Below are positions 26,830 through 57,400 of a DNA stretch of 64,000 bases, one piece after another. Position numbers and translations under genes: made by a program. The stretch spans positions 1-64,000 of IMG/VR virus record IMGVR_UViG_3300025141_000020. One strand, 5' to 3'. The notes under the pieces were generated by a model. The model did no database searches. It saw only the letters and a list, made by a program, of their open reading frames with translations, and was not told the origin of the DNA. Numbering within the stretch: position 1 is the stretch's first letter; each line of letters starts with the position of its first letter.

Positions 26830-26916
26830 GTTTATATTTTTTATATTAATAATCTACAATAAGTGTACCACACTAAGTTATACGACATTATGTCAGTATA
26901 GTTGTGAATACAGAGG

Positions 26917-26947
26917 CAAAAATACAAAAATAAATTTATATGAACAA
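26917..26947 (-). promoter_or_regulatory. Class I promoter TTGTTC-N17-TATTTTTG upstream of the sigma gene
   Basis: Exact Bacteroidota TTG-N20-TAnnTTTG geometry. Confidence 0.75.
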
Positions 26948-26964
26948 GTTTTGATTAAAAGAGT

Positions 26965-27309
26965 TTAGATACAGTATTTTTTAATAATTTCTATAGCTTC
27001 ATCATTACCATTAAAAGCTACACCAGCACTGAAATATTCTACATCACCGTTAGACGACTCTAATATCATAACTGGTGTAAATTTTATCTTACCTGGGTTT
27101 TCTTCGTCTGCATCACGAAAGTCCCATCTGTTTTGGATATTTTCTTTTATTTCCTTCCCTTCTAGTCCTCTAGCACCATCTCGTGGTGTTATACATCTAA
27201 TTGTATGTGGTATACTTAAATCATTAAGTCTTTTTTTCAAATCAATACAATCAGTGCATTCATTTTCGGTAAATAGTGATAGTTTATACTTACTAGTATC
27301 TAATTTCAT
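26965..27309 (-). CDS. Glutaredoxin/thioredoxin-fold protein
   Basis: LFTENECTDCIDLKKRL (CxxC) and cis-Pro motif FTPVMIL. Confidence 0.7.
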   Translation of the reverse strand: MKLDTSKYKLSLFTENECTDCIDLKKRLNDLSIPHTIRCITPRDGARGLEGKEIKENIQNRWDFRDADEENPGKIKFTPVMILESSNGDVEYFSAGVAFNGNDEAIEIIKKYCI

Positions 27310-27315
27310 ATTTTA

Positions 27316-27879
27316 TTAGTTATCTTTAAATTTATTAAGGAATTCCAATTCTTCATGTGTTAAACTTTCCATTCCTTCTTCTATAATTTTATCTAATAAA
27401 CTATCTATAGTAAAGGGCATACGTAATTTAACGTCTACTTTTTCTATAGGTGATTTTAATGTATTTCTAAGGTCTAACATTTTTTTTTCTACTAAAGCTT
27501 TAAGTGAATTAGATAATTCTTCAGCTAGTTTTGGGTCTATTAGTTTATGTTTTATGTTTTTACCTAATCCGTCATGAAATAAGTGTGACTCTAATTCTTT
27601 ATCCATACGATAAGCCAGTTTATTGGGTTTAGGCATTAAAAAATAGGTATTTACCTGGGGTGTTAAGAATTCATTCATTATTTCTGAAATTTCTTCAAAA
27701 TTCATTTTAGATTTTACACACATGATTACAATGTTGGTTCCTGTTACAAAAGAAAATTCGTCGTCAACTACTATACTCTGCATAACTTCCCTGATATTAG
27801 TTATTATTTGACGGCTTTTTTCAACCGTTTCCCAACCCCCAAACATGAATACCAAATATTTTTTTGTTCTCTTTTTCAT
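27316..27879 (-). CDS. Hypothetical protein with a DUF6576-like C-terminus
   Basis: IDSLLDKIIEEGMESLTHEELEFL. Confidence 0.6.
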   Translation of the reverse strand: MKKRTKKYLVFMFGGWETVEKSRQIITNIREVMQSIVVDDEFSFVTGTNIVIMCVKSKMNFEEISEIMNEFLTPQVNTYFLMPKPNKLAYRMDKELESHLFHDGLGKNIKHKLIDPKLAEELSNSLKALVEKKMLDLRNTLKSPIEKVDVKLRMPFTIDSLLDKIIEEGMESLTHEELEFLNKFKDN

Positions 27880-27892
27880 ATATAATAAATAT

Positions 27893-30220
27893 CTAAATAA
27901 TTCTAGATATATTCTTTTCTTTAGTTACTGTTATTATATTATCGGACCATTCTCTAACTAATGGATTATGAGTTATTAATAAAATATTTTCAAAATACTC
28001 TTTAATTCTACTGAAAAAAATACTTACTTCTTCTAGGTTCTCGTTGGATACTTTACCTAATACTTCGTCAAATACTGTTATATTTGGTCTAGGTAAACAT
28101 GAAACTTTAGTTAGTACTGTCCTAATAGCTAATGATGCCATAGTTTTTTCATATCCACTACCTGTTAATAATAATTTTTCCACCCCACTATCGTTATCTA
28201 CCATCCAAAAATCTACCTCGTTTTTGTCATTAACTTTAATCTTAACACTAAATTTAGTCACATCTGATAATAATGTTGTTAATTCATTATTTAATTTAGG
28301 AACGACACTTTTCATGATAGTTTTAATTATCCCATTTTTACCAAAAACAGTTAAATAAGCTCTAAATACTCTATCTACGTCATTCTCCTTATTTATGATA
28401 TCTATTCTTTCATTGTTTATCTTATTTGTATCTTCAATTACCTTATCTCTAGACTTATTCTCTTCAATAGTTCTAATTAGTTGGTCTTTTTTGTTATTTA
28501 ATACGTCAATTTCTGACTTAATAGTCATAGTCTTTTTATCTATATCGTTATTTTTTTCTAATTTTAATTTATTCTCTTCCCACTTTTTTAATCTACTAGA
28601 TAATTTATCTATATTAAGTTTCTTTTGGTCTATTTCTAATACTAGTCGTTCCTTTTTTAATATGTCTTTTTCATATTCATCAAAAATTAATTTTTTTGTA
28701 CTTAAAGTTTCTATAATTTTTTCAAATGATTTTAATTTTTCTTTGTCTTGTTTTACGTGTTTGGTTAATATTTTAATCTCATCTTTCAATCTTTTTATTT
28801 CCACACTATGGTCCACATCTTTAAGTGTTTGTTTACACATAGGACATATCTCAGACTCTATTAAATTATCTAAAGTATGATTTAGATTTTTTAAATTGGT
28901 TTCATTTTTTATGTTTTGGGTATTTAATGTGTCTCTGGATTTTGTTTTATCTCTTATTAATTCCAAATCTACTTCTTCTGGCACTTCATTATCTACATAA
29001 ATTTTTAATTTATCAGTCATACTTTCTAATATTCTACCCTCACTATTAATTTCTTCACCAACTAAACGTGGATTGGTGTTTTCCACATTCTTATCTATAT
29101 TCGTAGACTTACTAGCTAATAGGCCGTCTCTATCTTCATTTTTACCTTTTATTTTATTTTTAGTTTCTAATAATATAATATTATTATTTATATTTTCACT
29201 TAATAACACATCTTTTTCACTTTCTAGAGTTTTTATTTCATGTTTTAAATCTTCTATGTTATATAAATTAGATATTATTTTCTTTGACCACTCCGAGTAC
29301 ATTTTTTTAGCTACACTTTCTTTGTCTTTTAATGTCTCTAGACCCACAAATCTAGATAGTATATTACCTCGTTCTGTTGGTTTGGTATCTATTAGAGATT
29401 CTAGGTTTCCTGCTGTGGTTAGCACTGTTAATAAAAAATCGTTCATAGTTCCAATAGATTCCTTTATAAATGTCTCTGTTTCTCTCCTCTGTTCTCCGGT
29501 AAAATTCCTTAAGTCACCATTTTCATCTATTTGTAAAAATTCCAACGAAGTGCTTACTGACCAATCACCTTTTTTGGTTTTTTTTCTCTTAATTTTCCTA
29601 ATAATAATATAATCCTTACCGTCTATTTCTACGTCTCCTTGTACAAAAACTTCATTTGATTTCGTAAATCTATTAAAAATATCTATAGCTTTAGATGATT
29701 TTGTGGTGTCGTTGAAAAATAAGAATAGTATCAAATCTACAGCTAATACTGATTTTCCACCAAAATTAGGTGGGTTAGAGTCTACAACTGTTATCCCTCC
29801 TAATGAATTTATATCTAATATATTGTCTTTACCAAAAGATAAAAAGTTAGAGAATTTTATTTTTTTAATATAAACTCTTTTATATTTTGTGTTGATATTT
29901 AATTCATCGGACATTTTAGAATTAACTTTATCGTCTAATCTTTTTAATAAGTTTAAATCTACTCCGATAGAATGGGTTTTTACAAATTGTTCCATAAGAT
30001 TTTTTTGGTAAGTAGTATCCATTACATTCTCCTCAATGTCTATGTCTAACTCTCCTGTTGAATTTCTGTCGGTTGCTTTAGTTAAAAGCGTAACATTTTT
30101 TGAGTTGTACTTTCTTTGAAAGTAGCTCCTTACTCTTTTTATCTTTTCTTGTGTGAAGTTTTCTGGGGTATCTTCCCAGGTTACTTTAATAAAAGGGTTT
30201 TCTAACTTATCTATATCCAT
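27893..30220 (-). CDS. SbcC/Rad50/gp46-like SMC ATPase
   Basis: Walker A NFGGKS, coiled coils, zinc hook CPMC, signature SGYE, Walker B VFDE, H-loop ITH; class I promoter at 30227-30255. Confidence 0.92.
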   Translation of the reverse strand: MDIDKLENPFIKVTWEDTPENFTQEKIKRVRSYFQRKYNSKNVTLLTKATDRNSTGELDIDIEENVMDTTYQKNLMEQFVKTHSIGVDLNLLKRLDDKVNSKMSDELNINTKYKRVYIKKIKFSNFLSFGKDNILDINSLGGITVVDSNPPNFGGKSVLAVDLILFLFFNDTTKSSKAIDIFNRFTKSNEVFVQGDVEIDGKDYIIIRKIKRKKTKKGDWSVSTSLEFLQIDENGDLRNFTGEQRRETETFIKESIGTMNDFLLTVLTTAGNLESLIDTKPTERGNILSRFVGLETLKDKESVAKKMYSEWSKKIISNLYNIEDLKHEIKTLESEKDVLLSENINNNIILLETKNKIKGKNEDRDGLLASKSTNIDKNVENTNPRLVGEEINSEGRILESMTDKLKIYVDNEVPEEVDLELIRDKTKSRDTLNTQNIKNETNLKNLNHTLDNLIESEICPMCKQTLKDVDHSVEIKRLKDEIKILTKHVKQDKEKLKSFEKIIETLSTKKLIFDEYEKDILKKERLVLEIDQKKLNIDKLSSRLKKWEENKLKLEKNNDIDKKTMTIKSEIDVLNNKKDQLIRTIEENKSRDKVIEDTNKINNERIDIINKENDVDRVFRAYLTVFGKNGIIKTIMKSVVPKLNNELTTLLSDVTKFSVKIKVNDKNEVDFWMVDNDSGVEKLLLTGSGYEKTMASLAIRTVLTKVSCLPRPNITVFDEVLGKVSNENLEEVSIFFSRIKEYFENILLITHNPLVREWSDNIITVTKEKNISRII

Positions 30221-30255
30221 ATTTAAAATATAAGATAATGTTGTTAATATATCAA

Positions 30256-30591
30256 TTATACTATCCCTGGACCTGTGTCATCATTTTTAGGTGGTTTATT
30301 TTCCTCAAACCACTCTACAACAGCGTTAATAGCCCAAACAGAACCACTAGCTAACATACCATCAAAAAATATATTGCTATATGGTATTGTTACCATACTA
30401 ATAGTTGGTGAGTAAAATGCTATAGAGAAAAAGAATCCGACCCATGTTGAGGTACACATCATACACTCTAATAGGTCACCTAGGAACGTTGACTGGTTCG
30501 TTATCCATTGTCTTGTTTTATCGAATATGCTTCCAAATACTAGTATTTGTGACATTCCGTAAGCTGCTAAAATCCATATAAGTATTTCCAT
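30256..30591 (-). CDS. DUF1360-like CxxC membrane protein
   Basis: IFDKTRQWI...LLECMMCTSTWVGF with flanking TM helices. Confidence 0.7.
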   Translation of the reverse strand: MEILIWILAAYGMSQILVFGSIFDKTRQWITNQSTFLGDLLECMMCTSTWVGFFFSIAFYSPTISMVTIPYSNIFFDGMLASGSVWAINAVVEWFEENKPPKNDDTGPGIV

Positions 30592-30594
30592 AAT

Positions 30595-31032
30595 TTAATC
30601 TAGGTATGTGTCTTTTAAGTTAGATGTTTTTAAATATTGAGCTCTCCTGTTTACTGTAACGTTTTTAAAGTGTTCTAGAATATCTTCTTGTTTCTTCATT
30701 TCTTCTTTCTGTAAACTAATGACTTTTTCCCTTTCTAGTGATTGCTCTTTACATACATTTAATTTATCCAATAATTCTTTATTGTCAACCTCTTTGGTTA
30801 CAATTTTTTCTACTATAACTTCTTTTTCTACAGGTATCTCTACTATAACTTCTTTTATTACTTCTTTTTCTACTGGCATTTCTTGTATTTGTGATTTAGG
30901 TAAAAATGGAGCTACCCCATATTTGTCTAATACCAAACCATCTTTTGCACATTTGTTAAAGAACTCTTTGGTGTCTTCAATTTCATTTAATTTGCAGTAT
31001 TGTTCAAACTCTTTTAATAATTTTTTATCCAT
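30595..31032 (-). CDS. Hypothetical protein with VEKEV-type low-complexity repeats
   Basis: PVEKEVIKEVIVEIPVEKEVIVEKIVTKEV. Confidence 0.7.
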   Translation of the reverse strand: MDKKLLKEFEQYCKLNEIEDTKEFFNKCAKDGLVLDKYGVAPFLPKSQIQEMPVEKEVIKEVIVEIPVEKEVIVEKIVTKEVDNKELLDKLNVCKEQSLEREKVISLQKEEMKKQEDILEHFKNVTVNRRAQYLKTSNLKDTYLD

Positions 31033-31807
31033 TTATTAATATTTCTTTTTCTTTTTCGATATCATCAATATCTGTTATTCTAAAATTAAGATATGGTTGT
31101 GAATTAGTCAAATCTTTATATTTGTATTTATTTTTATTTATGTTATATATGCCATACCCATGTTTCTTTATACTTTCCCCAAAGTTTTGGCATATGGTAG
31201 ACCCAATCATATAAGCTTTCTTATTATTAGGTATTTTATAGGTTTGTCTTTTATGTATATCTCCTGCTAAAACCACATCACATCCATCAAACCTATCAAT
31301 ACTATAACCATCATTAAATGTATAACCAAAATCATTAGATGACCCTTCAATCATCCCATGAAATAAACCGACCTTATGTTTTTCTGTATTTTCTGGAATG
31401 TCAGGTTTTACATTATGAGATATTAATGAATATACACACCACAATATATTTTCGTCTTCATAACACCCTCTATTTTTATAGTAGGTGATATTATCATTAT
31501 TTAAACTTTTAACTACAGGTGTTATAGCGTCTAACCTATCTATATTATTTTCTAAAAAATCGTGATTACCAATTAAATAAACACATTTACATATTTTAGC
31601 TGTTTCAGTCATCCACCAACACATTAAATTTATTAATTCTGGGGTCATTTGGTTTTTGGAGTGCACTAAGTCCCCTGTAAACACTATCCTGTCTGGTTTA
31701 ATGTCGGACCATTCTTTTAAAGCCTGTTTTAATATTTTTTTATCTCGTTTATGTTGTTTGTATAATTTAAGATGTAAGTCGGAATAATGTACTATAGTGT
31801 TAATCAT
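31025..31807 (-). CDS. SbcD/Mre11/gp47-like metallophosphoesterase nuclease
   Basis: SDLH, TGDLVH, GNHD, FHG, GDIH motifs; upstream of the SbcC-like gene. Confidence 0.9.
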   Translation of the reverse strand: MINTIVHYSDLHLKLYKQHKRDKKILKQALKEWSDIKPDRIVFTGDLVHSKNQMTPELINLMCWWMTETAKICKCVYLIGNHDFLENNIDRLDAITPVVKSLNNDNITYYKNRGCYEDENILWCVYSLISHNVKPDIPENTEKHKVGLFHGMIEGSSNDFGYTFNDGYSIDRFDGCDVVLAGDIHKRQTYKIPNNKKAYMIGSTICQNFGESIKKHGYGIYNINKNKYKYKDLTNSQPYLNFRITDIDDIEKEKEILING

Positions 31808-32816
31808 CTTTTTTTTGTTGGTTTGCTGTATATCGTTCGCTTAGATAAATTATAGTCCCGAAAATAAGAAACTCTAAAGGTCCGTTTATAATCATTAGTA
31901 AACTTATTACAAATACTGGTATTATTATTGTTAATTGTGATATATTAGATATTAGGGTCATAATAATTCGTCTTATCATTACATTTTCAATTGGGAGTAC
32001 TATCTTAGTTGGGTTGTAATTAAAGTATCTTAACACCCTAACTACTAAAAGATATACTGCCAGTGATATCAACAACCAAACCAGGTATTTAAAATTTACC
32101 CAAATCAAAAAAACTAGTCCAGTGATGACTTTAATTGTGTTAACCAGTTGTACCTTATTAAAGAACTTTTTTAGGTATTTTTTTATATTTTCTATTGTAC
32201 ATGAGGTGCATGGTTTTGGTGGTTCTGGTTTAATTGCACCCTTAGTATAGATACTAATCCCCAACACACTTAGAAAGTCTTTTATAAGACTGGAGTTTTC
32301 ATGTATAACTTCTATTTCATAATCATCTCCATGTAATTCTTTTAATATTCTAAGTCTGTGGTTACCATCTACCAATTTATGTTTTTTATTTGTTGGTCCT
32401 GTAATAAACCTTAAACCTTCAAGTTTAAAATATTTGGTGGTTATTGTTGCTATTTCAGGGTGCTGTATAACTATTGGTTTTATTTCTAGGTTGTACCCCT
32501 CATTTTTCATTTTATCCCTTAAAGAATCCCAATCATATGGTTTACCTAAAAGTCTAACCATCACCCAAATTATGATTTTTTGAAGTGGGTTTAGTTTGTT
32601 TTTTAATGGTATAGATACAGTATTTAAACCTTCGTCGTTTGTTGGTGTTTTTCTTACAAAATCGTTTCTTGTTGTCCCGCATTGTTTTTGTAGTTGTTCA
32701 ATAGAATCACCTTTTTTGTAAAATATGAAGTTACTACCAATTAAATCTTTTAGTTTAACCTTCATGGTGTTGGTGTTTCTTGGATTGATTATGTCGTATT
32801 TCCTCATTTTTTTCAT
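31800..32816 (-). CDS. ParB/Srx-like domain fused to a C-terminal membrane domain
   Basis: PIVI...LVDGNHRL; CTSC; about four hydrophobic helices at the C-terminus. Confidence 0.6.
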   Translation of the reverse strand: MKKMRKYDIINPRNTNTMKVKLKDLIGSNFIFYKKGDSIEQLQKQCGTTRNDFVRKTPTNDEGLNTVSIPLKNKLNPLQKIIIWVMVRLLGKPYDWDSLRDKMKNEGYNLEIKPIVIQHPEIATITTKYFKLEGLRFITGPTNKKHKLVDGNHRLRILKELHGDDYEIEVIHENSSLIKDFLSVLGISIYTKGAIKPEPPKPCTSCTIENIKKYLKKFFNKVQLVNTIKVITGLVFLIWVNFKYLVWLLISLAVYLLVVRVLRYFNYNPTKIVLPIENVMIRRIIMTLISNISQLTIIIPVFVISLLMIINGPLEFLIFGTIIYLSERYTANQQKKDD

Positions 32817-33580
32817 TTTGTCATAATTTTTAATATCTCATCTCTAAAGTCATAACATTTAATAACTTTATATTCCTCATTCTTTTCGTTAAACCAGACT
32901 ATATAAGAATCACCCAAAACCAAATCAGTGTTTCTTTCTACAATTAACCTATAAAAAGATAATTGTAATGAATATGTGTTTAATTCACACACATCTAAAT
33001 GTGATAGGGGCTCTTTAAATTGTTGCCATTTATTAACCTTTTTTATGTCTTTATTTGTTTTCCAATCCCATATTTCTAATTGTTTTGACTTTTCGTTAAA
33101 AAACAACTGGTCAATCATTCCAGTTACACTCCATTCTTCATCACCAACAACAACCTCAGCTCTAACTGGTATTAATTTTCCATGAGAATCATCATAGAAT
33201 TTTTTAAACATATCTATAATCTTAAATACCCCTTCCTTACATTCTAACATCTTTTTTTCATCACCCAAGACATTAGTTATTTTATGTTCTGGGAATGGAA
33301 ATACTTTGTTGGTTAGGTAGTTTTCAGCAAATTCGTGAAAAGCGGAGCCTCTTTCACAAGAAAAATCTGCTTTATATTTCCACTCTTTTAATATCTCTTC
33401 TTTTGTTATACCTCTTTCGTCAGCTTTTTTTTGTGACCAATAATCTTTATCAAAAGGATGTTTATATTGGCCTATGATAGACGTTACTGACTTAGTTTTA
33501 ACTCCTTTCATGTAATAAACATGGTCTTGGTCATGAAATTTAATATTATTAAATTTAGCTAATTCTCTAGTTATTTTCAT
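32813..33580 (-). CDS. PD-(D/E)xK exonuclease (RecB/Cas4-like fold)
   Basis: SVTSII, RGSAFH, GMIDQL, IWDWKT, YSLQLSFY. Confidence 0.88.
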   Translation of the reverse strand: MKITRELAKFNNIKFHDQDHVYYMKGVKTKSVTSIIGQYKHPFDKDYWSQKKADERGITKEEILKEWKYKADFSCERGSAFHEFAENYLTNKVFPFPEHKITNVLGDEKKMLECKEGVFKIIDMFKKFYDDSHGKLIPVRAEVVVGDEEWSVTGMIDQLFFNEKSKQLEIWDWKTNKDIKKVNKWQQFKEPLSHLDVCELNTYSLQLSFYRLIVERNTDLVLGDSYIVWFNEKNEEYKVIKCYDFRDEILKIMTK

Positions 33581-34495
33581 TTATAGTAATGTTATTTCTT
33601 TTAATCCTTCTATCCCACCTAGTTCACCAACATCTTTATCTTTTGGTAGTTTAAGTAGTTTTACCTTATTCATTAGTCTTCCCCCTTCTAATTTTCTATA
33701 TAGTTTTTTTGAATCTTCCCAGGCATCACCATCTAAACATATAATTATGTTTTTTTGTGATTTATCATATAACATAGTCCATAATTTTTCACTTACACTT
33801 TTACCTAATACTGGTATAGAATTTTCTATAAAAAACATATCAAACACACCTTCAACCAAATATATGTCTTTTTCCCAATTAATTAAATGTTCATTAAATA
33901 TTATTTTATCCTTTTCAGCTTCAGGGTTTTTATATTTATTTTTATGTCCAGTATAGGACCTAGAAACAAAATAATTAAGGTTGTTGTCAATATCATAGGA
34001 GGGAACTATTACCCTGCCACTGTATTGACCTTGGGTTACGTAACCAATTTTAAATTTGTCTATAATTTGGTCGCTTAGTCCTCTTTTCCTTAAATAGTTA
34101 TAGGCTTCTTTGTATGGTATACTTAATTTTATACCTTCTTTAAAAGAAGTGTATTCTCTTGGTAGTTCTACTTTTTTATATTTTTTCTCTGTTTTTTTAA
34201 TGAAGTCCCCACCTATTAGTTTCCAGGTTTCCTTAGTTCGTCTATTTCCCCATTTATTAAATAATTTATTTATGGACCCGTGTGTATTCATATGTTCTGA
34301 ACAAGACCAACATTTATAGACACCCATATAATAATTTACTTCAAAGTTACCTTTACCATCACCATGGTCTAGGCCTTTTATATCATAAGAACAAACTGGA
34401 CAATCAAAAGAGATTTGTCCTTTATTCGGGTAGTGTGACATATTGTCACCTAAAACTTCATTCAATAATTCTATTAGTAGTATTGGGTCTTCCAT
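33581..34495 (-). CDS. DnaG-type DNA primase
   Basis: Zn finger CPVC...CWSC, YLRKRGL, RVIVP, KYKNP, TOPRIM VEGVFD and LDGD. Confidence 0.92.
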   Translation of the reverse strand: MEDPILLIELLNEVLGDNMSHYPNKGQISFDCPVCSYDIKGLDHGDGKGNFEVNYYMGVYKCWSCSEHMNTHGSINKLFNKWGNRRTKETWKLIGGDFIKKTEKKYKKVELPREYTSFKEGIKLSIPYKEAYNYLRKRGLSDQIIDKFKIGYVTQGQYSGRVIVPSYDIDNNLNYFVSRSYTGHKNKYKNPEAEKDKIIFNEHLINWEKDIYLVEGVFDMFFIENSIPVLGKSVSEKLWTMLYDKSQKNIIICLDGDAWEDSKKLYRKLEGGRLMNKVKLLKLPKDKDVGELGGIEGLKEITLL

Positions 34496-38671: not shown

Positions 38672-39451
38672 CTACATACATTTTGTACAACCCCCACTGC
38701 AAGTAGATTTTTCACCTAATTTATCACATAACATACAGTATATTTCATCATCTAAACAATAATCAAAATAGTTAGCTCCTGTAGATACCAAACATTTGTT
38801 AAGATATCCTAAATCTGCTATGTCAACTTTTCCGTCTCCATTAAAATCACCAATTAAGTCTTCCCCTTCTTCTGCAGTAGAACCTAGTAAATTAATTAAT
38901 AATTTAAAGTCTTCTTTATCTACAATTCCATTTCCATTAAAATCTGCACATGCGGTACAATACGTTGGGAAAAAATTTATTACTGATGACCCTACTGTCC
39001 AACAAGTATTAAACATACCTGTTGATGGTTCGTCTATACCATTTACTGTTTTTGATGGGTGGTAATTTGCCCATAATGTTGATTTAACCGGATTAGTTCC
39101 TATCCCTTGGTCATAAGTAATCACTCTATTGTCTTTAACCTCACAACTAGGGCCAACCATAACTGCTGATAGTGTGCCATAATTAACTTCGGTATCGGCC
39201 TGAACCCTACCTCTACTAGCTGGAATATCATAAAAACAACTAGTGGTTAGTGCACTTAAATCTACATCTGATACACAACTACCATCACCCACAAATCTAC
39301 GATAATCAATATCTGAATCTGATAATCCAAATTTTTTTATAGCGTCTACAAACCCACTGCCAGTAGTTAATAGTGTTTTACCGTAATCTGATAGATATAA
39401 TTTAAATGTATTACCAGAGAGTGTTACGTTATGTATGTTTAAATATGCCAT
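38672..39451 (-). CDS. Tail/baseplate protein with a dockerin-like paired Ca-binding domain
   Basis: N-terminus LSDYGKTLL...KFGLSDSDIDY; ADFNGNGIVDKEDFKLL and GDFNGDGKVDIADLGYL; Cys-rich tail. Confidence 0.7.
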   Translation of the reverse strand: MAYLNIHNVTLSGNTFKLYLSDYGKTLLTTGSGFVDAIKKFGLSDSDIDYRRFVGDGSCVSDVDLSALTTSCFYDIPASRGRVQADTEVNYGTLSAVMVGPSCEVKDNRVITYDQGIGTNPVKSTLWANYHPSKTVNGIDEPSTGMFNTCWTVGSSVINFFPTYCTACADFNGNGIVDKEDFKLLINLLGSTAEEGEDLIGDFNGDGKVDIADLGYLNKCLVSTGANYFDYCLDDEIYCMLCDKLGEKSTCSGGCTKCM

Positions 39452-41886: not shown

Positions 41887-44800
41887 TTAATATGATGATT
41901 GTTGGGAATAAAATGCATCCCTACTTATTTTAAATGTAACTCTCTCTGTTTGTGAATCAGTTTGTATTGTTTTCGCGTTAAGGATTGGGTAGTATCTTCT
42001 TATTATAACATCGTAAGAATAAGTACCGAATGTCGGTAGTTTTAATGTTACTATCTCATTTATATTACCTACTGTGTTTATATCTATAGTTATTTTATAA
42101 TCTCTAACTATGGACCCATTAGAATCAAATAGCCTAACTATAATCTCGTCAATAGTCGTTTTGTCTTTATAGTAAAATACTGGTATGCTTGGGTTCTTAT
42201 CTGGTGTAAAACCTATAACAGTATAAATTGTTCTATACCATAATGTGAATGTGTCGTTAACGGTATAAGTATCTAAACTATCTAATAGTTGAATTCTTGT
42301 GTCGCTTGTTTTTTGATAATCTTTTTCTGGGTATATTAATGCCCCATTAACCGCGATTGTTACCGCACCCACAGATTGTTTATCTAGATTAATATAATAA
42401 TACCCATCCTTTTCGAATATGGTTTCTGTGGTTGTAGTGGTTACGGTAGCGGGAACTTGGAAAGTTTGTATGTCGGTACCTCCTTTGGTGTCGTATAGAA
42501 ATTGTATGTTGTCCCCGTTTTTTACAGTTTCTTTAAAGAAGACAACTAAACCTGTCGACCTATTATACTGATAGTCACCATTATTCGCGGTTATTTCTAC
42601 CCCATCAGGCCATTTTGTGGGGTTGGTGTAGTTGGTACTTCCCGATATACCTTGTTTTAGTGTTACTCCGTTTACTGCCACCAACGGGGAACTTCCAATA
42701 CTTGCACTTAACTGGTAGCTAAAATTTTGTGCACTCCATGCAAATGGAATTGCTGGATTACTACCATCCACTTCTTGCATGCTACGTACCAATACCGTAT
42801 CTGTAGCCAGTTGGTGGGTTTGTACGGGTAACTTAAAGTCATCCAGGTATAGTGTTGGTATCGGTGGATTAGTTAAGACTGTCATGTATAAATCTTTATC
42901 ATAATCTATTTTTTTACTAGGTGGGTATTGAGCTGTATCAAACCATAGTTCTGTTTTAGCTTTTTTATCTTTAGTTAAGTAGCTAGGTCTAATAATATAT
43001 TCCCATGATTCGGTAGTTGATAATGCTGAAAATGGAATCTCTGTAGTACCTGTACATATAATACCTCCTGTTGCACTATCCACACCACAAGGCAATGTAT
43101 CAAACATAAATTCGTAATCGGGTAGTGTTGCTACTTCCTCTGTTTCAAAAACATATGGATATATCCTATATTTAGGATAACTGTTACCAAAAATTAAATC
43201 GTCTGTATTGCCACCAAAATAGAAAGTCATTTCTTTTGATGTGTCTGTACTTGCGTTGTAGATTGGTAACGCTGGCATATTACCAATTGTAGTTATTGGG
43301 GTTACGCTCGGGCTAGATAACCCTGGTATGGTTGTTGTTGGTTGTGGAGTACTTTGTAATGTTACATTAACTTTTGGTCGTATTACGGGTACCCCTTTAT
43401 TGCACCTGTTGTTGGTTGTGGGTCTACACTTTTGTGTGGTTATTATGTTTGATGTTGAGGCACTCGTTGCTAACACGCTTACTGTTGTAGATGGGCCCTC
43501 TAAATTAGATTTAAAGGTCATGTGATACCAATTTGCCTGTGGTTGTGACGTCTGATACATACCAATTCTTCCAGGTAATTTATATTTTAATAAGGAATTA
43601 TTATCTACCCATTCTGGTGCTGAGGCACTATTACCTGACCACGTAAGACTATTATTTAAATCAAAATTAATGTCATACACAGAATTATATGGTCTTGCAT
43701 CCCCTATGCTACCATTAAGTGGGTCTGTAAATTCTATTTTAAATCTAGTATTAGCTCTAGTAATCTTAATCCTAAGTCCTTGTACGGATGCCCAAGTACC
43801 ACCACTTGTTAGTGGTGATGTTGTTCCAGAGTTTGTTAGTATCATAGTTTGACCGTAGTCTGATGCCGCGGAGTAAGTAGTAGAGATGCAACCACCATTA
43901 CACTCCCTAAAATTAGGGCTTGTGTATCTATTGAATGCGTACGCACTCATATGAGAATTATTTCTTACTGATACTTGTCCTGTACTAGTTCTCATACTTA
44001 AAGATAATGAGTGTCTTACACCTATTGGTCCATATAACCCCAATGTATCTCTAAATGAATGTAGTAATAAAGCTATTGTATCGTCATCACTAGATGTTGA
44101 GTTTACCGTGACTTCCCATTCATAGTTGTCAGATGGGCAAGCACTAACCATACCTGTTGACTGTGAATTATTTGTGTTAGATTGTAATTTTCTCAAACTA
44201 CCAGTTAAGACATTACTAGCTAAAGCTATTTTACCATTAGAATCTACTGTTCTATCACTACCATCAACATCAATATTTCTAACTCCATAAGTACTACCTG
44301 TACACATTGAAGCTCTTGGATTGCCGTACATCCCATAGTTTTGTCTTGGGTCTATAGTTAACCATTTTACCAATGGTGTTTGTGATGTAGTCGGCCACCT
44401 AACAACAAATTTATCAATGTATTCATTATAATAAAATTTACCTATATCACCGGCAAGTGTACCAACAGTTGGTCCTATTGCGTTACCTTCCTCCATTTCT
44501 AGATTGTATGCTCCTAGATACCAATCTGTTCCTGTGTCAGTTAATCTATCTGCTGTATCTCCGGTATATAACCAGACTTTTGGGTCGTTAGAGTGTATTA
44601 CTCCGTCTTGGAATAGTCCTGTAGGTACTGAACGGTCTTCTGCCCAACCAGGCCCCCAACCTGCTTGAAATTGAAAATCGTAATCAGCGAAAGGTACGAA
44701 AGCACCCCACTTATCAAAAATTTCAGTCATTGACCACCCACTATATGTCAATCCACTATTATAATCAAATTCAGTACATCCGGAACTAAACTCAATATTG

Positions 44801-45300
44801 TCAACTGTAGGTCTATTTTCAACCATAGTAACACTATATACACCATTATCTAGATTGTTGAAAGTATATGTTGTGTCCGCTGAGGTTCCGTAATAAATGT
44901 CTATTAATTTATCGGATTTTCTTAGCTCATACCTAAAATACTCCCCTAATGTTGTAGCGGTAGTTACGGCTATACTACATTTCTTGTTTGTGTCCGTAAC
45001 ACATGAATTGTCTGATAGACTTACAGTAAGAGTTGGTTTAACTAGTCCACTTATGGTAAATGTGGTGGACCCGGTCTCCCCTACAATGTCAGTTATAGTT
45101 CCAGTATAATCACCTTCACATAGATTATACACCCCAAAAGTGTCTGCGGTATAAGAGTTAACTGAGCCTGACCAAGAAACACTATATGGTGAAGTCCCCC
45201 CAGAAACTGTTAACCCATTTATGTATCCACTACAAGACCCGCTTAATGTGTTTCTTAAATTATATTGACTAAAAATTATATTTCCGTTATTTGTTGGCAT
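41887..45300 (-). CDS. Putative receptor-binding/baseplate protein with a SprB-type repeat and TSP-C-like lectin domain
   Basis: G.I.LTVSGGTSPYSVSWS...NLCEGDYTGTITD (SprB repeat); VNSTSSDDDTIA...GRIGMYQTSQ..ANW (thrombospondin-C-like); C-terminal VAVNG..L...DY repeats. Confidence 0.65.
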   Translation of the reverse strand: MPTNNGNIIFSQYNLRNTLSGSCSGYINGLTVSGGTSPYSVSWSGSVNSYTADTFGVYNLCEGDYTGTITDIVGETGSTTFTISGLVKPTLTVSLSDNSCVTDTNKKCSIAVTTATTLGEYFRYELRKSDKLIDIYYGTSADTTYTFNNLDNGVYSVTMVENRPTVDNIEFSSGCTEFDYNSGLTYSGWSMTEIFDKWGAFVPFADYDFQFQAGWGPGWAEDRSVPTGLFQDGVIHSNDPKVWLYTGDTADRLTDTGTDWYLGAYNLEMEEGNAIGPTVGTLAGDIGKFYYNEYIDKFVVRWPTTSQTPLVKWLTIDPRQNYGMYGNPRASMCTGSTYGVRNIDVDGSDRTVDSNGKIALASNVLTGSLRKLQSNTNNSQSTGMVSACPSDNYEWEVTVNSTSSDDDTIALLLHSFRDTLGLYGPIGVRHSLSLSMRTSTGQVSVRNNSHMSAYAFNRYTSPNFRECNGGCISTTYSAASDYGQTMILTNSGTTSPLTSGGTWASVQGLRIKITRANTRFKIEFTDPLNGSIGDARPYNSVYDINFDLNNSLTWSGNSASAPEWVDNNSLLKYKLPGRIGMYQTSQPQANWYHMTFKSNLEGPSTTVSVLATSASTSNIITTQKCRPTTNNRCNKGVPVIRPKVNVTLQSTPQPTTTIPGLSSPSVTPITTIGNMPALPIYNASTDTSKEMTFYFGGNTDDLIFGNSYPKYRIYPYVFETEEVATLPDYEFMFDTLPCGVDSATGGIICTGTTEIPFSALSTTESWEYIIRPSYLTKDKKAKTELWFDTAQYPPSKKIDYDKDLYMTVLTNPPIPTLYLDDFKLPVQTHQLATDTVLVRSMQEVDGSNPAIPFAWSAQNFSYQLSASIGSSPLVAVNGVTLKQGISGSTNYTNPTKWPDGVEITANNGDYQYNRSTGLVVFFKETVKNGDNIQFLYDTKGGTDIQTFQVPATVTTTTTETIFEKDGYYYINLDKQSVGAVTIAVNGALIYPEKDYQKTSDTRIQLLDSLDTYTVNDTFTLWYRTIYTVIGFTPDKNPSIPVFYYKDKTTIDEIIVRLFDSNGSIVRDYKITIDINTVGNINEIVTLKLPTFGTYSYDVIIRRYYPILNAKTIQTDSQTERVTFKISRDAFYSQQSSY

Positions 45301-54455: not shown

Positions 54456-57400
54456 CTATAGTAGTGTTAACGGAGTACCACAACTTTCACAACCCTCTTT
54501 AACACCACATGTAACCCATTGTCCTGTATGGTTATGAAATTGTACGGTTATAGTTCCTAATGTTCCTCCTGCTGCAGTAGTGTCATGTAGAACATTACCA
54601 TAACCATCATTTGCCCAACTAACGTGACCAGGAATAGGACTTCCATTTGGGTAAACCGCTGTAGTTGTAGCCTCCCAAAAACAATCTCCTAGAACACCAT
54701 TTTGAAATGGGTCTGGGTTACCTCCTGGGCCTCCAGCTACACAACATACACAACAGTCACCTGATAAAGTACCTGAGCCGTAATTGTAGAATCCACTTAA
54801 ACCTGGGTATGTAAAACATTCGTTTTCTTGGAAAGCATACTGTATGGTTGGGAAACTCCATTGGCTACCTCCTAAATATGAATGGGTAAGTGGTTGTCCT
54901 GGTGCTAGTAAACCTGCTGACATTAAATCTGGTTCACAGCATCCACAAATTGTGTGTTCACAACAGTTTTGGGTACAACCAGTATAATCACTTATTGGCC
55001 ATGCATCGTCCCACACATTAGATGGACCTCCAGTTGTTCCTGTCCCAGGAAGTATCCAACAATCACATGTTATGGGTCCTGTTGTACAATGACAAGGTCG
55101 AGCTCCACCCCATACCTCAGGACAACAACCTTGAGCACCTCTTGGAGATAATGTTGGGTCCCATATTTGACATGCAGGTCCTAAATTTGGTAATGGGCTC
55201 GGATTAAGGTATAAACCTGAATCGTTATATTTAGTAGCTGTCCCCAAAGGAAGTGTTGCTGCACAAGCAGCCCCGGTAATACTATCGGCATTACACTGAT
55301 TCACACAAGCATTAAAATTAGTGGGACTTACCCATTCACAAGCCAGATTCCTCATAATGGATTGTATTTCTACGAAATCTGTACATGTTGATACGTCGGT
55401 ATTGTATTCGGTCATCAATCCAGCAATAGTATCTCCCCAAGATGGGTACATAGCGAAGCCTAATCCCCAAGTCGTATGACAATGGTATGTACCCCCGTTT
55501 GGGTTTGGTGGATAGCCACTAGATGAGCTTGGTGGTGCGTTAGAATATGTGCTATAAAACAGATGGTCAGAAGAACACATGCCTCCGGTTCCCACTCCTG
55601 TTGGTGGTGGAATCGGGCAAGGAACAGTTTGTCCTGGTGACGATATTCCTACTGTATTGGTGTAAACACTTTGTATTGCAGGCTGGAAAGGTGGGGCAAC
55701 GTTAATATGCCAGTTGATGTAATCCGTGGGAGTACCAACAACACCACTATGGTTAGTATTACTACATTTTGATTGAGCCCACCAATATGGACTACTATTA
55801 CATAAGTAAGACTTACATAAGGCGTCACAGTCTACTTGATTCACAAAAACATCTGGGTCACTATAACTATACATCGCTTGAACACACCCACCAATATTTC
55901 CATCAATACATTTCCACGTTAGTGTTGGTGTACCTCCTGTACCACATGTAAAACATTTCTCATCAAGTCCAGTGGAATTAAGAAAGTGTTCAGTGTCACA
56001 TGGCACCCACCATGGCTTACCGGCACCTTGACCCTGCCAAGTTGTTACGTTAGGGCTAGGTCCCATTGTATAGAGATTTAACCCGTCTGCACTATTACCA
56101 GATAACCAATTACACCAATGTTCTGATGGTGAGTATTGGTCTGGTAACATATTTGCTAAATGTTGTCCTGCATCCCACATCTGAGTTCTAACCCAACAAC
56201 AGCCCGGGTGGAGTGGGTCTTTTACAATTTGTCCTTCTCCCCAATAAGGTTCTGTGCTTGACCACATTTGTACTGTTGTGTGGGGTATTACATTGGTTCC
56301 GTCCCAACCGTCAAATGTGTTTGGTACTGAGTTATCATATATCCCAAGACTACCATTCGATAATACAGTTGGATTCCAATAGCCAAGTAAACCAGCCTGA
56401 TGATGGTACCATGATTTTTGTCCCACACACTGGTCACATTCTCCTGGCTCTATAGGTTCACAATTATTTGTTAATGTCATGCAACTATAGAAACTATCAT
56501 AACAATCACGAGTACAAGTTGCACACCCCCAATCTAATTCACATGGTGTTGGTGCTGATGGAGGTGTACATGGTCCAACATTTATATCTAACCATCCACT
56601 ACATTTACAAGGGTTTAATACTGAATTTGGGTTAGATACTATGTATTGGCTACCCATTGGATTTTGACATATAATACAACATGGTACTGGTGGTCCAGAA
56701 GATACAGGAGCAGAACCTATAGTTCCTAGATTAATATCTACGGGATTAACATCTGGCCCTAATACTTTTTGATGTACTATTTGCTCTGATACGAATCCTT
56801 CTGTTGTTGGATAGATTGGTACTGGGCCGTCATTACACTTGCCCATACTTACTTGTGTGTCGATTCCATTACAATTACAAGGAGCTGCTCCCTGCACTAT
56901 ATAGTAAATAATACCTGTTCCACGAACCTCTGGTAGATGTTTACAACATATTTTACAATTTCCTGAACTACTCCCACCGTCTGGGCATTCTACCATTGGT
57001 CCCGTGCCATCTAAAGACGTACAATACATTCGGCATGGTAAATTTTGGGGGTTTGGGTAGCTAAGTGTCGTACCTGCTACACAACCACCTTGGCCATCAT
57101 CTTCACAACAACAACAATCCTGTGGACAACTAATCTGACTAATTCCCGCACAAACTGAGTTACATGGTAGTCCTGTTGGGTTGAATTGCGTCGTTTGTGT
57201 ACCGTTAACACAGTTTCCAAATCCATCGTCCTCACAACAACAACATGGAGTTCCTTGGGTGGTGGGTTCACAACAGTATTTACACCATTCCTGACACTTT
57301 TCTAAACTAGAGAAAGGTGTACCACCACCATTATAACTCACTTGTGAACCAGGAGCTCCAGCGTCAGTACCCCAAACATTATCCCCATAAGATGCATTAG

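What the first reader, a model, noticed from the sequence alone, without database searches (positions are those of the whole stretch)
43515..45245. Host-like adhesin modules (SprB repeat, thrombospondin-C-like lectin) grafted onto a baseplate protein
Seen: a SprB-type repeat at aa ~20-75 with a degenerate second copy, and a DDD..GRIG..SQ..W pattern matching the TSP C-terminal lectin-like domain. Established: SprB is the Flavobacterium gliding adhesin. Inference: domains captured from host surface proteins for binding glycans, biofilm or the gliding machinery.
Basis: partly seen in the sequence, partly recalled or inferred. Interest (0 to 1): 0.6.

Follow-up and report, generated by a model that had tools for sequence, protein, structure and literature searches.

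The report
Phage adhesin: SprB repeat plus lectin
A 1137-residue protein of an uncultured marine jumbo phage does carry a SprB-type Ig-like repeat and a thrombospondin-C-like lectin domain, but these form an old, portable phage adhesin cassette (also found in crAss-like phages), not a recent graft from the host.

Summary
The ORF is window 41887-45300 (-), 1137 aa. It lies in the tail/baseplate late-gene block of a 210-kb marine jumbo-phage contig.

**Observation: holds.**
- Residues 19-86 are a true SprB-type repeat unit. A profile built only from phage kin hits every repeat of Bacteroidota SprB-repeat proteins, and 61 of 301 Bacteroidota genomes.
- Residues 87-172 are a second Ig-like domain. 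Its kinship to the first repeat is not statistically shown.
- Residues about 183-600 fold (pLDDT 82, pTM 0.87) as a ConA/L-type-lectin jelly roll with a 140-residue insertion.
- The DDD, G-x-I-G and SQ residues are the conserved core of a wider phage tail-fibre lectin family (PBS1 gp197, 0305phi8-36 gp163, PhiPA3 gp235).
- That family links to Pfam TSP_C by profile comparison (94-95%).
- Pfam's SprB and TSP_C models do not hit the protein itself.

**Interpretation: partly right.**
- The lectin profile was found in 0 of 301 Bacteroidota genomes.
- The SprB repeat is the most conserved domain of the protein.
- The 600-residue N-terminal cassette recurs with at least three unrelated C-termini, including in crAss-like phages.

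**Most likely function:** a virion surface adhesin that binds host glycans.

The parts
41887..45300 (-). Whole ORF, 1137 aa (P0001). It is tightly packed between a 1387-aa and a 798-aa ORF on the same strand.
   Evidence: There are 41 full-length metagenomic homologues at 28-90% identity, and no paralogue in the 210-kb contig.
45043..45246 (-). Domain 1, aa 19-86: SprB-type Ig-like repeat unit, with conserved C23 and C61.
   Evidence: It is the most conserved domain: 91/61/36% identity to close, middle and far kin. AF2 gives a beta-sandwich with pLDDT 56-82.
44785..45042 (-). Domain 2, aa 87-172: second Ig-like beta-sandwich. It is a possible degenerate SprB repeat, and also shows weak Ig_J-like hits.
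   Evidence: AF2 strands 90-161. Pfam Ig_J is sub-threshold in 21 of 39 kin, best 27.7 bits against a cut-off of 29. Kinship to domain 1 is not significant.
44605..44754 (-). aa 183-232: N-terminal helix and strands of the lectin jelly roll (the IF-x-KW motif).
   Evidence: Structural alignments span model residues ~8-426 of the aa 176-606 model. The same N-terminal motif occurs in the wider family consensus.
44176..44604 (-). aa 233-375: subfamily-specific insertion in the jelly roll, about 140 aa. It is rich in invariant Trp, Tyr and Arg (W243, Y245, R252, W260, Y261, Y290, N292, W313).
   Evidence: Only ~185 of 431 residues align to known lectins, while pTM 0.87 shows one compact unit. An 'ins' HMM always precedes the lectin core in kin. 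Conserved residues are listed.
43501..44175 (-). aa 376-600: lectin core, a ConA / L-type-lectin / TSP-C-like jelly roll.
44080..44088 (-). DDD motif, aa 405-407.
   Evidence: In the 66-sequence phage family the first and third Asp of the aligned D-D-D motif are invariant. The motif is aligned to the DDD of Pfam-positive TSP_C proteins.
43528..43572 (-). GRIG...SQ...W motif, aa 577-591, on the last two strands of the jelly roll.
   Evidence: G580 is invariant in the family. G and SQ are invariant in the wider family. The motif is aligned to G-R/Q-x-G-F-Y-N-Y-S-Q of TSP_C proteins.
43261..43500 (-). aa 601-680: Thr/Pro/Ser-rich low-confidence linker containing C625 and C633.
   Evidence: pLDDT 32-66. 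Composition is T16, P11, S9 of 80 residues.
41890..43260 (-). aa 681-1137: all-beta C-terminal half (C1-C3), specific to the jumbo-phage lineage. aa 831-960 is the most variable segment.
   Evidence: There is no Pfam, PHROG, PDB-sequence or Atlas-feature match. Its fold was not searched on its own.

Best explanation
P0001 is a virion surface adhesin, most likely a tail- or baseplate-peripheral fibre-like protein. It belongs to an uncultured marine jumbo myophage that probably infects Bacteroidota.

Proposed architecture and mechanism
- The N-terminal ~600 residues are a portable adhesin cassette: one SprB-type Ig-like repeat, a second Ig-like domain, and a TSP-C/L-type-lectin-like jelly roll carrying a 140-residue aromatic-rich insertion.
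- A flexible Thr/Pro-rich linker joins the cassette to a lineage-specific all-beta C-terminal half. I infer that this half fixes the protein to this phage's virion.
- The lectin, helped by the Ig-like domains, binds polysaccharide or glycoprotein on the host surface and so mediates or strengthens adsorption.

Origin of the modules
- The lectin belongs to an old, phage-wide tail-fibre lectin family that is remotely related to thrombospondin C-terminal domains.
- The SprB-type repeat is of Bacteroidota type, but it has long been fixed in phage genomes.

Shown: domain identities, folds, family relations, cassette modularity, gene context.
Inferred: virion location, orientation, glycan binding, host.
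For: Context
- The window is part of a 210,568-bp IMG/VR virus record.
- On the same strand upstream lie a tail sheath gene and a gp6/J-like baseplate wedge gene. The wedge gene's nearest cultured relatives include Flavobacterium phage immuto, where tail fibre and spike genes follow the wedge gene.
- Synteny is conserved in a 293,879-bp contig.

Domains
- SprB repeat.
- Lectin fold.

Family of the lectin
- hhalign of the lectin region against a 66-member phage family gives 99.7%, E 1e-25.
- That family equals phrog_33406 'tail fiber protein', phrog_21285 'virion structural protein' and phrog_36886.
- Its members co-occur with collagen, Gp53-like_C, Phage_fiber_rpt, Peptidase_S74 and Mtd_N domains.
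- The domain is found in PBS1 gp197 and the AR9 tail fibre (next to a baseplate wedge gene), in 0305phi8-36 gp163 (a virion protein by mass spectrometry according to its record), in PhiPA3 gp235 and in the Leeuwenhoekiella phage tail fibre.
- The ESM-Atlas fold search puts 'virion structural protein' clusters first, with 250 aa aligned. BFVD top hits are jumbo-phage virion proteins.

Modularity
- The cassette recurs with three unrelated C-terminal classes. One class sits in crAss-like phages between capsid and ring genes.

Background
- ConA-fold lectins on jumbo-phage tail fibres are described in the literature (PMC7824862).
Against: - There is no direct evidence that the protein is in the virion, and no homology of any part to a known baseplate or fibre-anchoring domain.
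- The orientation is ambiguous. Within the family the N-terminal repeat is the most conserved part and aa 831-960 the most variable. In classical fibres that pattern would put the anchor at the N-terminus and specificity at the C-terminus.
- No sugar- or Ca-binding residues could be checked, because the tools give no residue-level superposition.
- The predicted 'beads on a string' monomer shows no trimerisation element.
- Host assignment is indirect.
- The C-terminal half was not fold-searched alone.
Confidence: 0.6

Rival explanations
1. Reverse orientation. The conserved N-terminal cassette is the virion-proximal or structural part. It may dock through its conserved first ~16 residues or through the Ig domains. 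The variable C-terminal half, especially aa 831-960, would then be the receptor-binding part, and the lectin would give at most secondary, low-affinity binding.
For: - Domain 1 is the most conserved part and aa 831-960 the least conserved.
- In crAss001, head and tail fibres dock by short N-terminal peptides (PMC10172136).
- From general knowledge, tail fibres commonly have conserved N-terminal anchors and variable C-terminal tips.
Against: - The same cassette occurs in phages with unrelated virion architectures (a sheathed jumbo phage and crAss-like podophages), while the C-terminal halves are lineage-specific.
- In PBS1 gp197 and the small members of the lectin family, the lectin lies in the C-terminal (distal) half, after collagen or fibre repeats.
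Confidence: 0.2
2. Not a tail protein. It would be a capsid or neck decoration (a Hoc-like or head-fibre-like adhesin) that displays Ig-like and lectin domains for weak binding to environmental or host glycans.
For: - The architecture of Ig-like domains followed by an anchor resembles T4 Hoc (from general knowledge).
- The crAss-like cassette proteins lie just downstream of the capsid gene block, and crAss001 has head fibres.
Against: - In this phage the gene lies among giant ORFs downstream of the baseplate wedge gene, not near a capsid gene.
- Relatives of the lectin are mostly annotated as tail fibre proteins and lie beside baseplate genes.
Confidence: 0.1
3. The jelly-roll domain is an enzyme (a glycanase, lyase or 3-keto-sugar hydrolase of the ConA-like fold). 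The protein would then be a depolymerase rather than a lectin.
Against: - The top matches are non-catalytic: TSP-C, CBM66, the GALC lectin domain, ERGIC-53 and legume lectins.
- No GH16 E-x-D-x-x-E motif or PL7 motif is present.
- The family-invariant residues (DDD, G, SQ) are those shared with TSP_C proteins.
Confidence: 0.05
4. One reading: both modules were captured from host surface proteins, and the SprB-type repeat lets the phage engage the gliding/T9SS machinery.
For: - SprB-type repeats are abundant in Bacteroidota giant surface proteins.
- A few Bacteroidota carry Pfam-positive TSP_C domains. One of these ORFs ends in a stretch that by eye resembles a CHU_C/T9SS sorting tail (judged from its sequence only, not profile-tested).
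- A paper found in the search reports mutations in gliding-motility genes as a phage-defence mechanism in Flavobacterium (PMC9804748, title).
Against: - The lectin profile was found in 0 of 301 Bacteroidota genomes, and its kin are phage proteins of many host phyla.
- The repeat is only 30-42% identical to cellular repeats. It is conserved across a family that diverges to 28% identity, so any capture was ancient.
- No test of any gliding-machinery interaction exists.
Confidence: 0.05

Closest known systems
SprB repeat (Pfam PF13573) of Bacteroidota T9SS surface adhesins (SprB of Flavobacterium johnsoniae and 'gliding motility-associated' giant proteins)
   Same: It shares the ~75-aa unit, with the C-x-G...GG-x-x-PY-x-x-W...LC-x-G-x-Y...D signature and two conserved Cys. 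A phage-only profile recognises cellular repeats over its full length.
   Different: - There is a single clear unit, plus one degenerate Ig domain, instead of tens of tandem repeats.
- There is no T9SS C-terminal sorting domain.
- The Pfam model itself does not reach threshold.
- The protein is encoded by a phage.
Thrombospondin/COMP C-terminal L-type-lectin-like domain (Pfam TSP_C, PF05735; PDB 1UX6, 2RHP, 1YO8, 3FBY)
   Same: - It shares the DDD-x-x-G strand and the G-x-x-G...SQ terminal strands.
- The intermediate phage family aligns to Pfam-positive bacterial TSP_C proteins at 94-95% probability.
   Different: - There is no direct Pfam or profile hit.
- It carries a 140-aa insertion.
- It has no TSP type-3 calcium repeats or coiled coil.
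- Other ConA-like lectins and CBMs score within 1 Z.
Phage tail-fibre / virion lectin family (phrog_33406, phrog_36886, phrog_21285): PBS1 gp197, AR9 tail fibre, 0305phi8-36 gp163, PhiPA3 gp235, Leeuwenhoekiella phage Arctus_1 tail fibre
   Same: The lectin core is homologous (hhalign 99.7%, E 1e-25) and has the same invariant residues. Members are virion or tail-fibre proteins, mostly of jumbo phages.
   Different: - P0001 itself gets no PHROG hit.
- Its subfamily has the 140-aa insertion and the N-terminal SprB-Ig/Ig pair.
- The lectin lies in the N-terminal half rather than at the distal C-terminus.
Cassette-bearing proteins of marine crAss-like phages (P0063, P0075; loci L041, L042)
   Same: They share the N-terminal cassette of repeat 1, repeat 2, insertion and lectin core.
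   Different: They have an unrelated C-terminal half. They sit in a podophage genome between the Crass_capsid and CrAss_Ring genes.
Ig-like decoration/adhesin proteins of phages (for example T4 Hoc) and ConA-fold lectins on jumbo-phage fibres (Iyer et al. 2021, PMC7824862)
   Same: They follow the same general logic: displayed Ig-like and lectin domains for weak carbohydrate binding at the virion surface (the Hoc comparison is from general knowledge).
   Different: The domain families differ: SprB-type Ig and TSP-C-like lectin here, against LamG3, SPRY and discoidin there. No sequence relation to Hoc was tested.

Membership tests
SprB repeat (PF13573) | Match to the Pfam model above its gathering score (28 bits) | tested here: not met
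   There is no hit for P0001 even at E<=10. Kin reach 14.6-24.5 bits, in register.
SprB repeat (PF13573) | Significant, full-unit sequence similarity to bona fide SprB repeats | tested here: met
   - phmmer gives E 1.9e-7 in a database of 5.8e9 proteins.
- The phage-family HMM hits 14-22 repeats per SprB-repeat protein at up to 44 bits.
- The phage-only profile hits 61 of 301 Bacteroidota genomes at E<=1e-6.
SprB repeat (PF13573) | Signature residues (C-x-G, GG-x-x-PY-x-x-W, LC-x-G-x-Y, D) conserved | tested here: met
   Alignments. G, I, G, P, Y, L and Y are invariant across 34 phage sequences.
SprB repeat (PF13573) | Long tandem array plus a T9SS C-terminal sorting domain, as in SprB-like adhesins | tested here: not met
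   There is one clear unit. The second domain is not significantly related. No CHU_C or Por_Secre_tail match above noise was found.
TSP_C (PF05735) / thrombospondin C-terminal lectin-like domain | Match to the Pfam model (cut-off 25.6 bits) | tested here: not met
   No hit for P0001, for its 38 kin, or for the six-frame genome. The profile against PDB sequences also gives nothing.
TSP_C (PF05735) / thrombospondin C-terminal lectin-like domain | L-type-lectin-like jelly-roll fold superposable on TSP-1/COMP | tested here: met
   [not shown]
TSP_C (PF05735) / thrombospondin C-terminal lectin-like domain | Profile-level homology to Pfam-positive TSP_C proteins | tested here: inconclusive
   - Transitive link: A2 to A3 gives 99.7%. 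A3 to bacterial TSP_C proteins gives 94.9% and 93.9%. 2 of 66 A3 members hit TSP_C, best E 6.9e-6.
- Direct link: A2 to TSP_C gives only 12-16% probability.
TSP_C (PF05735) / thrombospondin C-terminal lectin-like domain | Preceded by TSP type-3 calcium-binding repeats; calcium sites in the lectin domain | tested here: not met
   No TSP_3 or other calcium-repeat hit was found. The domain is preceded by Ig-like domains. Calcium-site residues could not be compared, because no residue-level superposition is available.
Phage tail-fibre lectin family (phrog_33406 / 36886 / 21285) | Homology of the lectin core to the family | tested here: met
   hhalign gives 99.7%, E 1e-25, over 181 columns. The cassette-bearing relative P0048 hits phrog_36886 at 1.6e-10. 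P0001 itself gets no PHROG hit.
Phage tail-fibre lectin family (phrog_33406 / 36886 / 21285) | Presence in the virion / tail fibre | not testable with these tools
   The phage is uncultured. There is only context evidence and the annotation of relatives.
Baseplate protein | Homology to a known baseplate component | tested here: not met
   [not shown]
Baseplate protein | Gene in the baseplate/tail-fibre gene block | tested here: met
   It lies on the same strand, ~24 kb downstream of the gp6/J-like wedge gene and downstream of the sheath gene. A comparable layout occurs in Flavobacterium phage immuto.
ConA-fold glycanases/lyases (GH16, PL7) | Catalytic sequence motifs | tested here: not met
   No E-x-D-x-x-E motif, and no PL7 Q-I-H or Y-F-K-A-G motif, is present.

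The most novel reading that the evidence does not exclude
The SprB-Ig / Ig / TSP-C-like-lectin cassette is a dedicated 'Bacteroidota-surface' recognition module traded among unrelated marine phage lineages (jumbo myophages and crAss-like podophages). Its SprB-type repeat would work by mimicking or engaging the host's own SprB-family adhesins or T9SS-borne surface glycoproteins, for example by homophilic Ig-Ig contacts, so that the phage rides or targets the gliding-adhesin layer.
Probability: 0.07. Interest if true: 0.75.

Novelty: new member of a known kind. Interest (0 to 1): 0.38.

Why it matters
- It gives a concrete candidate adhesin for a clade of uncultured marine jumbo phages (~290 kb) whose tail-module proteins, as far as scanned, gave no or only marginal family matches.
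- The SprB-type repeat, together with the cassette shared with crAss-like phages, is a usable host-phylum marker (Bacteroidota) for such contigs.
- It links a widespread, poorly described tail-fibre lectin family of jumbo phages (PBS1, AR9, PhiPA3, 0305phi8-36 and others) to the thrombospondin C-terminal domain by fold and by profile. This is a small but real addition to the list of adhesion domains shared by phages and animals.
- It is not a new mechanism. Modular phage adhesins built of Ig-like and ConA-fold lectin domains are already known.

Tried and rejected
**Searches on the protein itself that found nothing**
- Pfam and PHROGs on the single protein gave nothing useful.
- tblastn of the whole protein against 50,697 phage records found no match.
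- phmmer and profile searches against PDB sequences found no match.
- The Pfam TSP_C and SprB models found nothing in the six-frame genome. TSP_C also found nothing in the PBS1, Arctus_1 and 0305phi8-36 records.

**Structure searches of limited use**
- The whole-protein Foldseek search of the PDB was uninformative, giving generic multi-Ig giants. The domain had to be folded alone.
- The Atlas feature search of the C-terminal half gave no usable hit.

**Neighbouring genes**
- The neighbouring giant ORFs gave no useful Pfam or PHROG match (only one marginal PHROG hit, E 0.005, to a family of unknown function for the 1387-aa ORF), and the three tested (1387, 1254 and 798 aa) gave no PDB-sequence match.

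**Technical failures**
- The search for related loci with the repeat alignment failed because it had no conserved word.

**Readings rejected**
- An enzyme reading was rejected for lack of motifs.
- A recent host graft was rejected on conservation and distribution.

**Not used**
- No promoter or terminator signal above chance was found around the gene.
- Read laying and complex prediction were not used. No binding claim between named proteins is made.
- No alternative genetic code was needed.


Full report
**What is there**

The finding's span (43515-45245) is aa 19-595 of a single ORF, window 41887-45300 on the minus strand, 1137 aa (P0001). The window is the first 64 kb of a 210,568-bp IMG/VR virus record, estimated 66% complete. 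GC content is about 33%.

The gene sits in a run of tightly packed minus-strand ORFs of 631, 259, 798, 1137, 1387, 1254, 306 and 2883 aa. Those that were scanned gave no useful Pfam or PHROG match, apart from a dockerin/EF-hand motif in the 259-aa ORF and one marginal PHROG hit (E 0.005, a family of unknown function) in the 1387-aa ORF.

Further upstream on the same strand lie a gp6/J-like baseplate wedge gene (phrog_6, E 2e-21) and a tail sheath gene. Downstream the block abuts replication genes: RuvC-like resolvase, primase, exonuclease, SbcCD and a sigma factor.

The wedge protein's nearest cultured relatives are Flavobacterium phage immuto, Microcystis phage Mel-JY01 and a 484-kb uncultured phage. 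In immuto the wedge gene is followed within about 15 kb by genes annotated as tail fibre and tail spike.

The gene order around P0001 is conserved in a 293,879-bp contig. Near-identical DNA is held only by marine metagenomes.

So this is a late, tail-module gene of a marine jumbo myophage. That it is a 'baseplate protein' is an inference from position alone.

**The SprB-type repeat**

A word-indexed phmmer search of 5.8 billion proteins returned two kinds of hit:
- 41 unnamed metagenomic homologues at 28-90% identity.
- Two 'gliding motility-associated-like' proteins carrying PF13573 (SprB) and PF13585, at E 1.9e-7 and 1e-4.

BLASTP aligns aa 19-85 in register with many of their repeats at 30-42% identity.

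An HMM made from the phage family's aa 17-86 hits essentially every ~78-aa repeat of those two proteins over nearly its whole length, up to 44 bits per repeat. Relatives of the closer cellular protein are all from Bacteroidota.

A 34-sequence phage-only profile (A4) finds 58-117 repeats per genome in three Bacteroidota genomes. It finds matches in 61 of 301 sampled Bacteroidota genomes at E<=1e-6, inside ORFs of 1000-8800 aa.

Pfam's own 37-position model covers only the first half of the unit.
- It does not hit P0001.
- It gives sub-threshold, in-register hits in four divergent kin (14.6-24.5 bits; cut-off 28).

Domain 1 is therefore a genuine SprB-type repeat unit that formally fails the Pfam threshold.

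**The second copy**

aa 87-172 is predicted as a second beta-sandwich. Its C-terminal half follows the repeat's F..L..G.Y.V.V.D register.

Kinship to domain 1, or to cellular repeats, is not significant. It gives weak Ig_J-type hits in 21 of 39 family members. 'Degenerate second copy' is a fair description, but it is unproven.

**The lectin domain**

Structure prediction:
- The full-length AF2 model (mean pLDDT 75) shows a well-predicted unit at aa ~188-600.
- Folded alone with 38 homologues, aa 176-606 gives pLDDT 82 and pTM 0.87.

An exhaustive VIA-align search of 48,161 PDB representatives gave the following:

|---|---|---|
| Thrombospondin-1 C-terminal domain (2rhp_A) | 15.8 | rmsd 3.0, 187 aa |
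| Thrombospondin-1 C-terminal fragment (1ux6_A) | 15.0 | |
| BT3469, annotated 'putative glycosyl hydrolase' (4jqt_B) | 15.0 | |
| CBM66 | 14.7 | |
| Galactocerebrosidase lectin domain | 14.6 | |
| ERGIC-53, VIP36, legume lectins | 12-13 | |
| Phage baseplate/Dit lectin modules (8zdo_a, 5ly8) | 12.3 and 10.2 | |

Foldseek puts COMP first (E 3e-6), with ERGIC-53, the GH43 C-terminal domain and TSP-1/2 close behind.

Only about 185 of the 431 residues align. The jelly roll is made of aa ~183-232 plus aa 376-600. Between them lies an insertion of about 140 residues (aa 233-375) that packs on the roll and is rich in invariant Trp, Tyr and Arg.

By sequence, neither Pfam TSP_C nor a family profile against PDB sequences gives any hit.

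**Relatives of the lectin**

A full HMMER profile search of 1.84 billion representatives with aa 176-606 found 149 clusters, 59 of them at E<=1e-10.

The weaker tail of that list, 66 sequences (alignment A3), has:
- The consensus T.NS..IGFVS..YDNY..EVTL.ST..DDD.IG.VLA ... YGY...SQ..S.F..I.F.
- Invariant N, S, D.D, G and SQ.

hhalign between the P0001 family and A3 gives 99.7% probability, E 1e-25.

The A3 members:
- Match phrog_33406 ('tail fiber protein'), phrog_21285 ('virion structural protein') and phrog_36886.
- Co-occur with collagen, Gp53-like_C, Phage_fiber_rpt, Peptidase_S74 and Mtd_N domains.

By tblastn the domain is in 65-67 cultured phage records, nearly all of them jumbo phages:
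- PBS1 gp197 and the AR9 tail fibre, which lie two genes from a baseplate wedge gene.
- PhiPA3 gp235.
- 0305phi8-36 gp163, a virion protein by mass spectrometry according to its record.
- PaBG, Lu11 and Psa21.
- Erwinia, Ralstonia and Campylobacter phages.
- The tail fibre of Leeuwenhoekiella phage Arctus_1.

The fold searches agree. ESM-Atlas puts 'virion structural protein' clusters first with 250 aligned residues. BFVD puts jumbo-phage virion proteins first.

The lectin is thus a member of an old phage tail-fibre lectin family.

**Is that family TSP_C-like by sequence?**

- 2 of the 66 A3 members hit Pfam TSP_C, best E 6.9e-6. It is the only ConA-type Pfam family hit more than once.
- Pfam TSP_C finds bona fide domains in 3 of 301 Bacteroidota genomes:
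  - A 232-aa protein with an N-terminal hydrophobic stretch ending in a Cys, which I read as a lipoprotein signal (53.5 bits).
  - A 586-aa protein whose C-terminal stretch I read, from the sequence alone, as resembling a CHU_C/T9SS sorting tail; no profile test was run.
- A3 aligns to the first of these at 94.9% probability (E 4.6e-8, 163 columns), with DDD on DDD and G.IG..YSQ on YGY...SQ.
- A3 aligns to a five-sequence TSP_C alignment at 93.9%.
- The direct comparison of the P0001 family with these proteins is weak (12-16%), though in the same register.

I read this as probable remote homology to TSP_C through the phage family, with the fold match as independent support. It is not membership of the Pfam family.

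**Modularity and origin**

Mapping sub-profiles onto the 149 hits shows that repeat 1, repeat 2, the insertion and the lectin core travel together as an N-terminal cassette of about 600 residues. That cassette is joined to at least three unrelated C-terminal classes:

| Class | C-terminal half | Where found |
|---|---|---|
| I | C1-C3 of P0001 and its kin | Jumbo phages |
| II | Unrelated | crAss-like phages, between the Crass_capsid gene and the CrAss_Ring genes |
| III | Unrelated | A third phage type; the neighbouring ORF carries Pfam-positive SprB repeats |

The insertion plus lectin, without the repeats, also occurs in two other settings:
- A 2449-aa protein at the muzzle position of a crAss-like phage.
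- A protein with a Fib_succ_major domain.

Within the P0001 family, conservation differs by domain:
- The SprB repeat is the most conserved: 91/61/36% identity to close, middle and far kin.
- aa 831-960 is the most variable: 60/33/27%.

The contig holds no paralogue. The lectin profile finds nothing in 301 Bacteroidota genomes, although it scores E 1.7e-208 on its own genome.

Two conclusions follow:
- The lectin was not taken from the host.
- The SprB-type repeat is of Bacteroidota type, but it was fixed long ago in a cassette that phages exchange among themselves.

The adhesin cassette is the constant part, and the lineage-specific C-terminal half is what changes.

**Mechanism**

I commit to the following reading, at about 0.6 confidence. 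P0001 is a virion surface adhesin, and it would work as follows.
- The lectin binds host surface glycans, aided by the aromatic-rich insertion and the two Ig-like domains.
- The Thr/Pro-rich linker gives reach.
- The lineage-specific C-terminal half anchors the protein to this phage's tail or baseplate periphery.

The main uncertainty is orientation. The conservation pattern and the N-terminal docking of crAss001 fibres favour the opposite polarity (rival 1, 0.2).

The other readings are less likely:
- A capsid decoration (0.1).
- An enzyme (0.05; no GH16 or PL7 motifs).

The host is inferred to be Bacteroidota from three indirect lines:
- The type of the repeat.
- The sharing of the cassette with crAss-like phages, which per the review abstract (PMC10136315) infect Bacteroidetes.
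- The Flavobacterium-phage affinity of the wedge protein.

**Comparison with what is known, and novelty**

- ConA-fold lectins on jumbo-phage tail fibres and Ig-like virion decorations are established (PMC7824862; the latter also from general knowledge).
- SprB repeats have already been annotated in uncultured phage proteins.
- A full-text search found no paper linking phage tail fibres to the thrombospondin C-terminal domain.
- A search for 'SprB repeat' with 'phage' returned one paper, whose title and abstract concern polymorphic toxins in Bacteroidetes rather than phage proteins; I did not read it further.

The protein is a new, unannotated member of a known kind, with two modestly new points:
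- The TSP-C affinity of a widespread phage lectin family.
- The sharing of one adhesin cassette by jumbo and crAss-like marine phages.

**Limits**

- No residue-level superposition was available.
- No expression or virion data exist.

Noticed in passing
window 38672-39451 (-): A 259-aa ORF two genes downstream of the target carries a dockerin type I / EF-hand calcium-binding motif (PF00404, E 1.2e-9). An ORF of the same size sits at the same position in the 294-kb relative (L005). It might be a calcium-dependent docking partner within the fibre block.
   Followed up: partly
window 14683-15858 (-): A 391-aa ORF matches Pfam DruA (Druantia defence protein A) at E 3e-24 over nearly the whole model. 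This is a phage-encoded homologue of a defence-system component.
   Followed up: no
window 54456-63107 (-): A 2883-aa ORF has no Pfam match. Its GC content (~0.39-0.41) is clearly above the rest of the window (~0.26-0.36). It lies between the baseplate wedge gene and the target.
   Followed up: no
L002 7965-9896 (G000 71864-73795, -): A ribonucleotide reductase gene (phrog_367, E 3e-130) sits inside the tail module, between the sheath/tube region and the baseplate wedge gene.
   Followed up: no
L041 10001-14011; L042 8383-12378; L044 10001-17350: Marine crAss-like phages carry the same SprB-Ig/Ig/lectin cassette on a different C-terminal half. It lies 4-5 kb downstream of the capsid gene. The lectin also occurs inside a 2449-aa protein at the muzzle position, right after the ring-protein genes.
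   Followed up: partly
L049 1327-3087; L048 1387-2085: A few Bacteroidota genomes (3 of 301) encode Pfam-positive TSP_C domains. One ORF (232 aa) starts with a hydrophobic stretch ending in a Cys that looks like a lipoprotein signal. Another (586 aa) ends in a stretch that by eye resembles a CHU_C/T9SS sorting tail; neither feature was profile-tested. So thrombospondin-C-like lectins do exist in this phylum, though rarely.
   Followed up: partly
L043 1-328: In a third phage type that carries the cassette (class III C-terminus), a 1317-aa ORF a few genes upstream of the cassette gene in the same block has SprB repeats that pass Pfam. SprB-type repeats therefore recur in more than one virion-block gene of these phages.
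   Followed up: no
window 43261-43500 (-), aa 601-680: This is a Thr/Pro/Ser-rich, low-confidence linker with two partly conserved cysteines (C625 in 31 of 39 kin, C633 in 22 of 39). It could be a glycosylated or disulfide-stapled hinge.
   Followed up: no
window 26029-34495 (-): A replication/recombination module directly abuts the structural block. It comprises a phage sigma factor, SbcC/SbcD-like nuclease, an exonuclease, a primase and a RuvC-like resolvase.
   Followed up: partly
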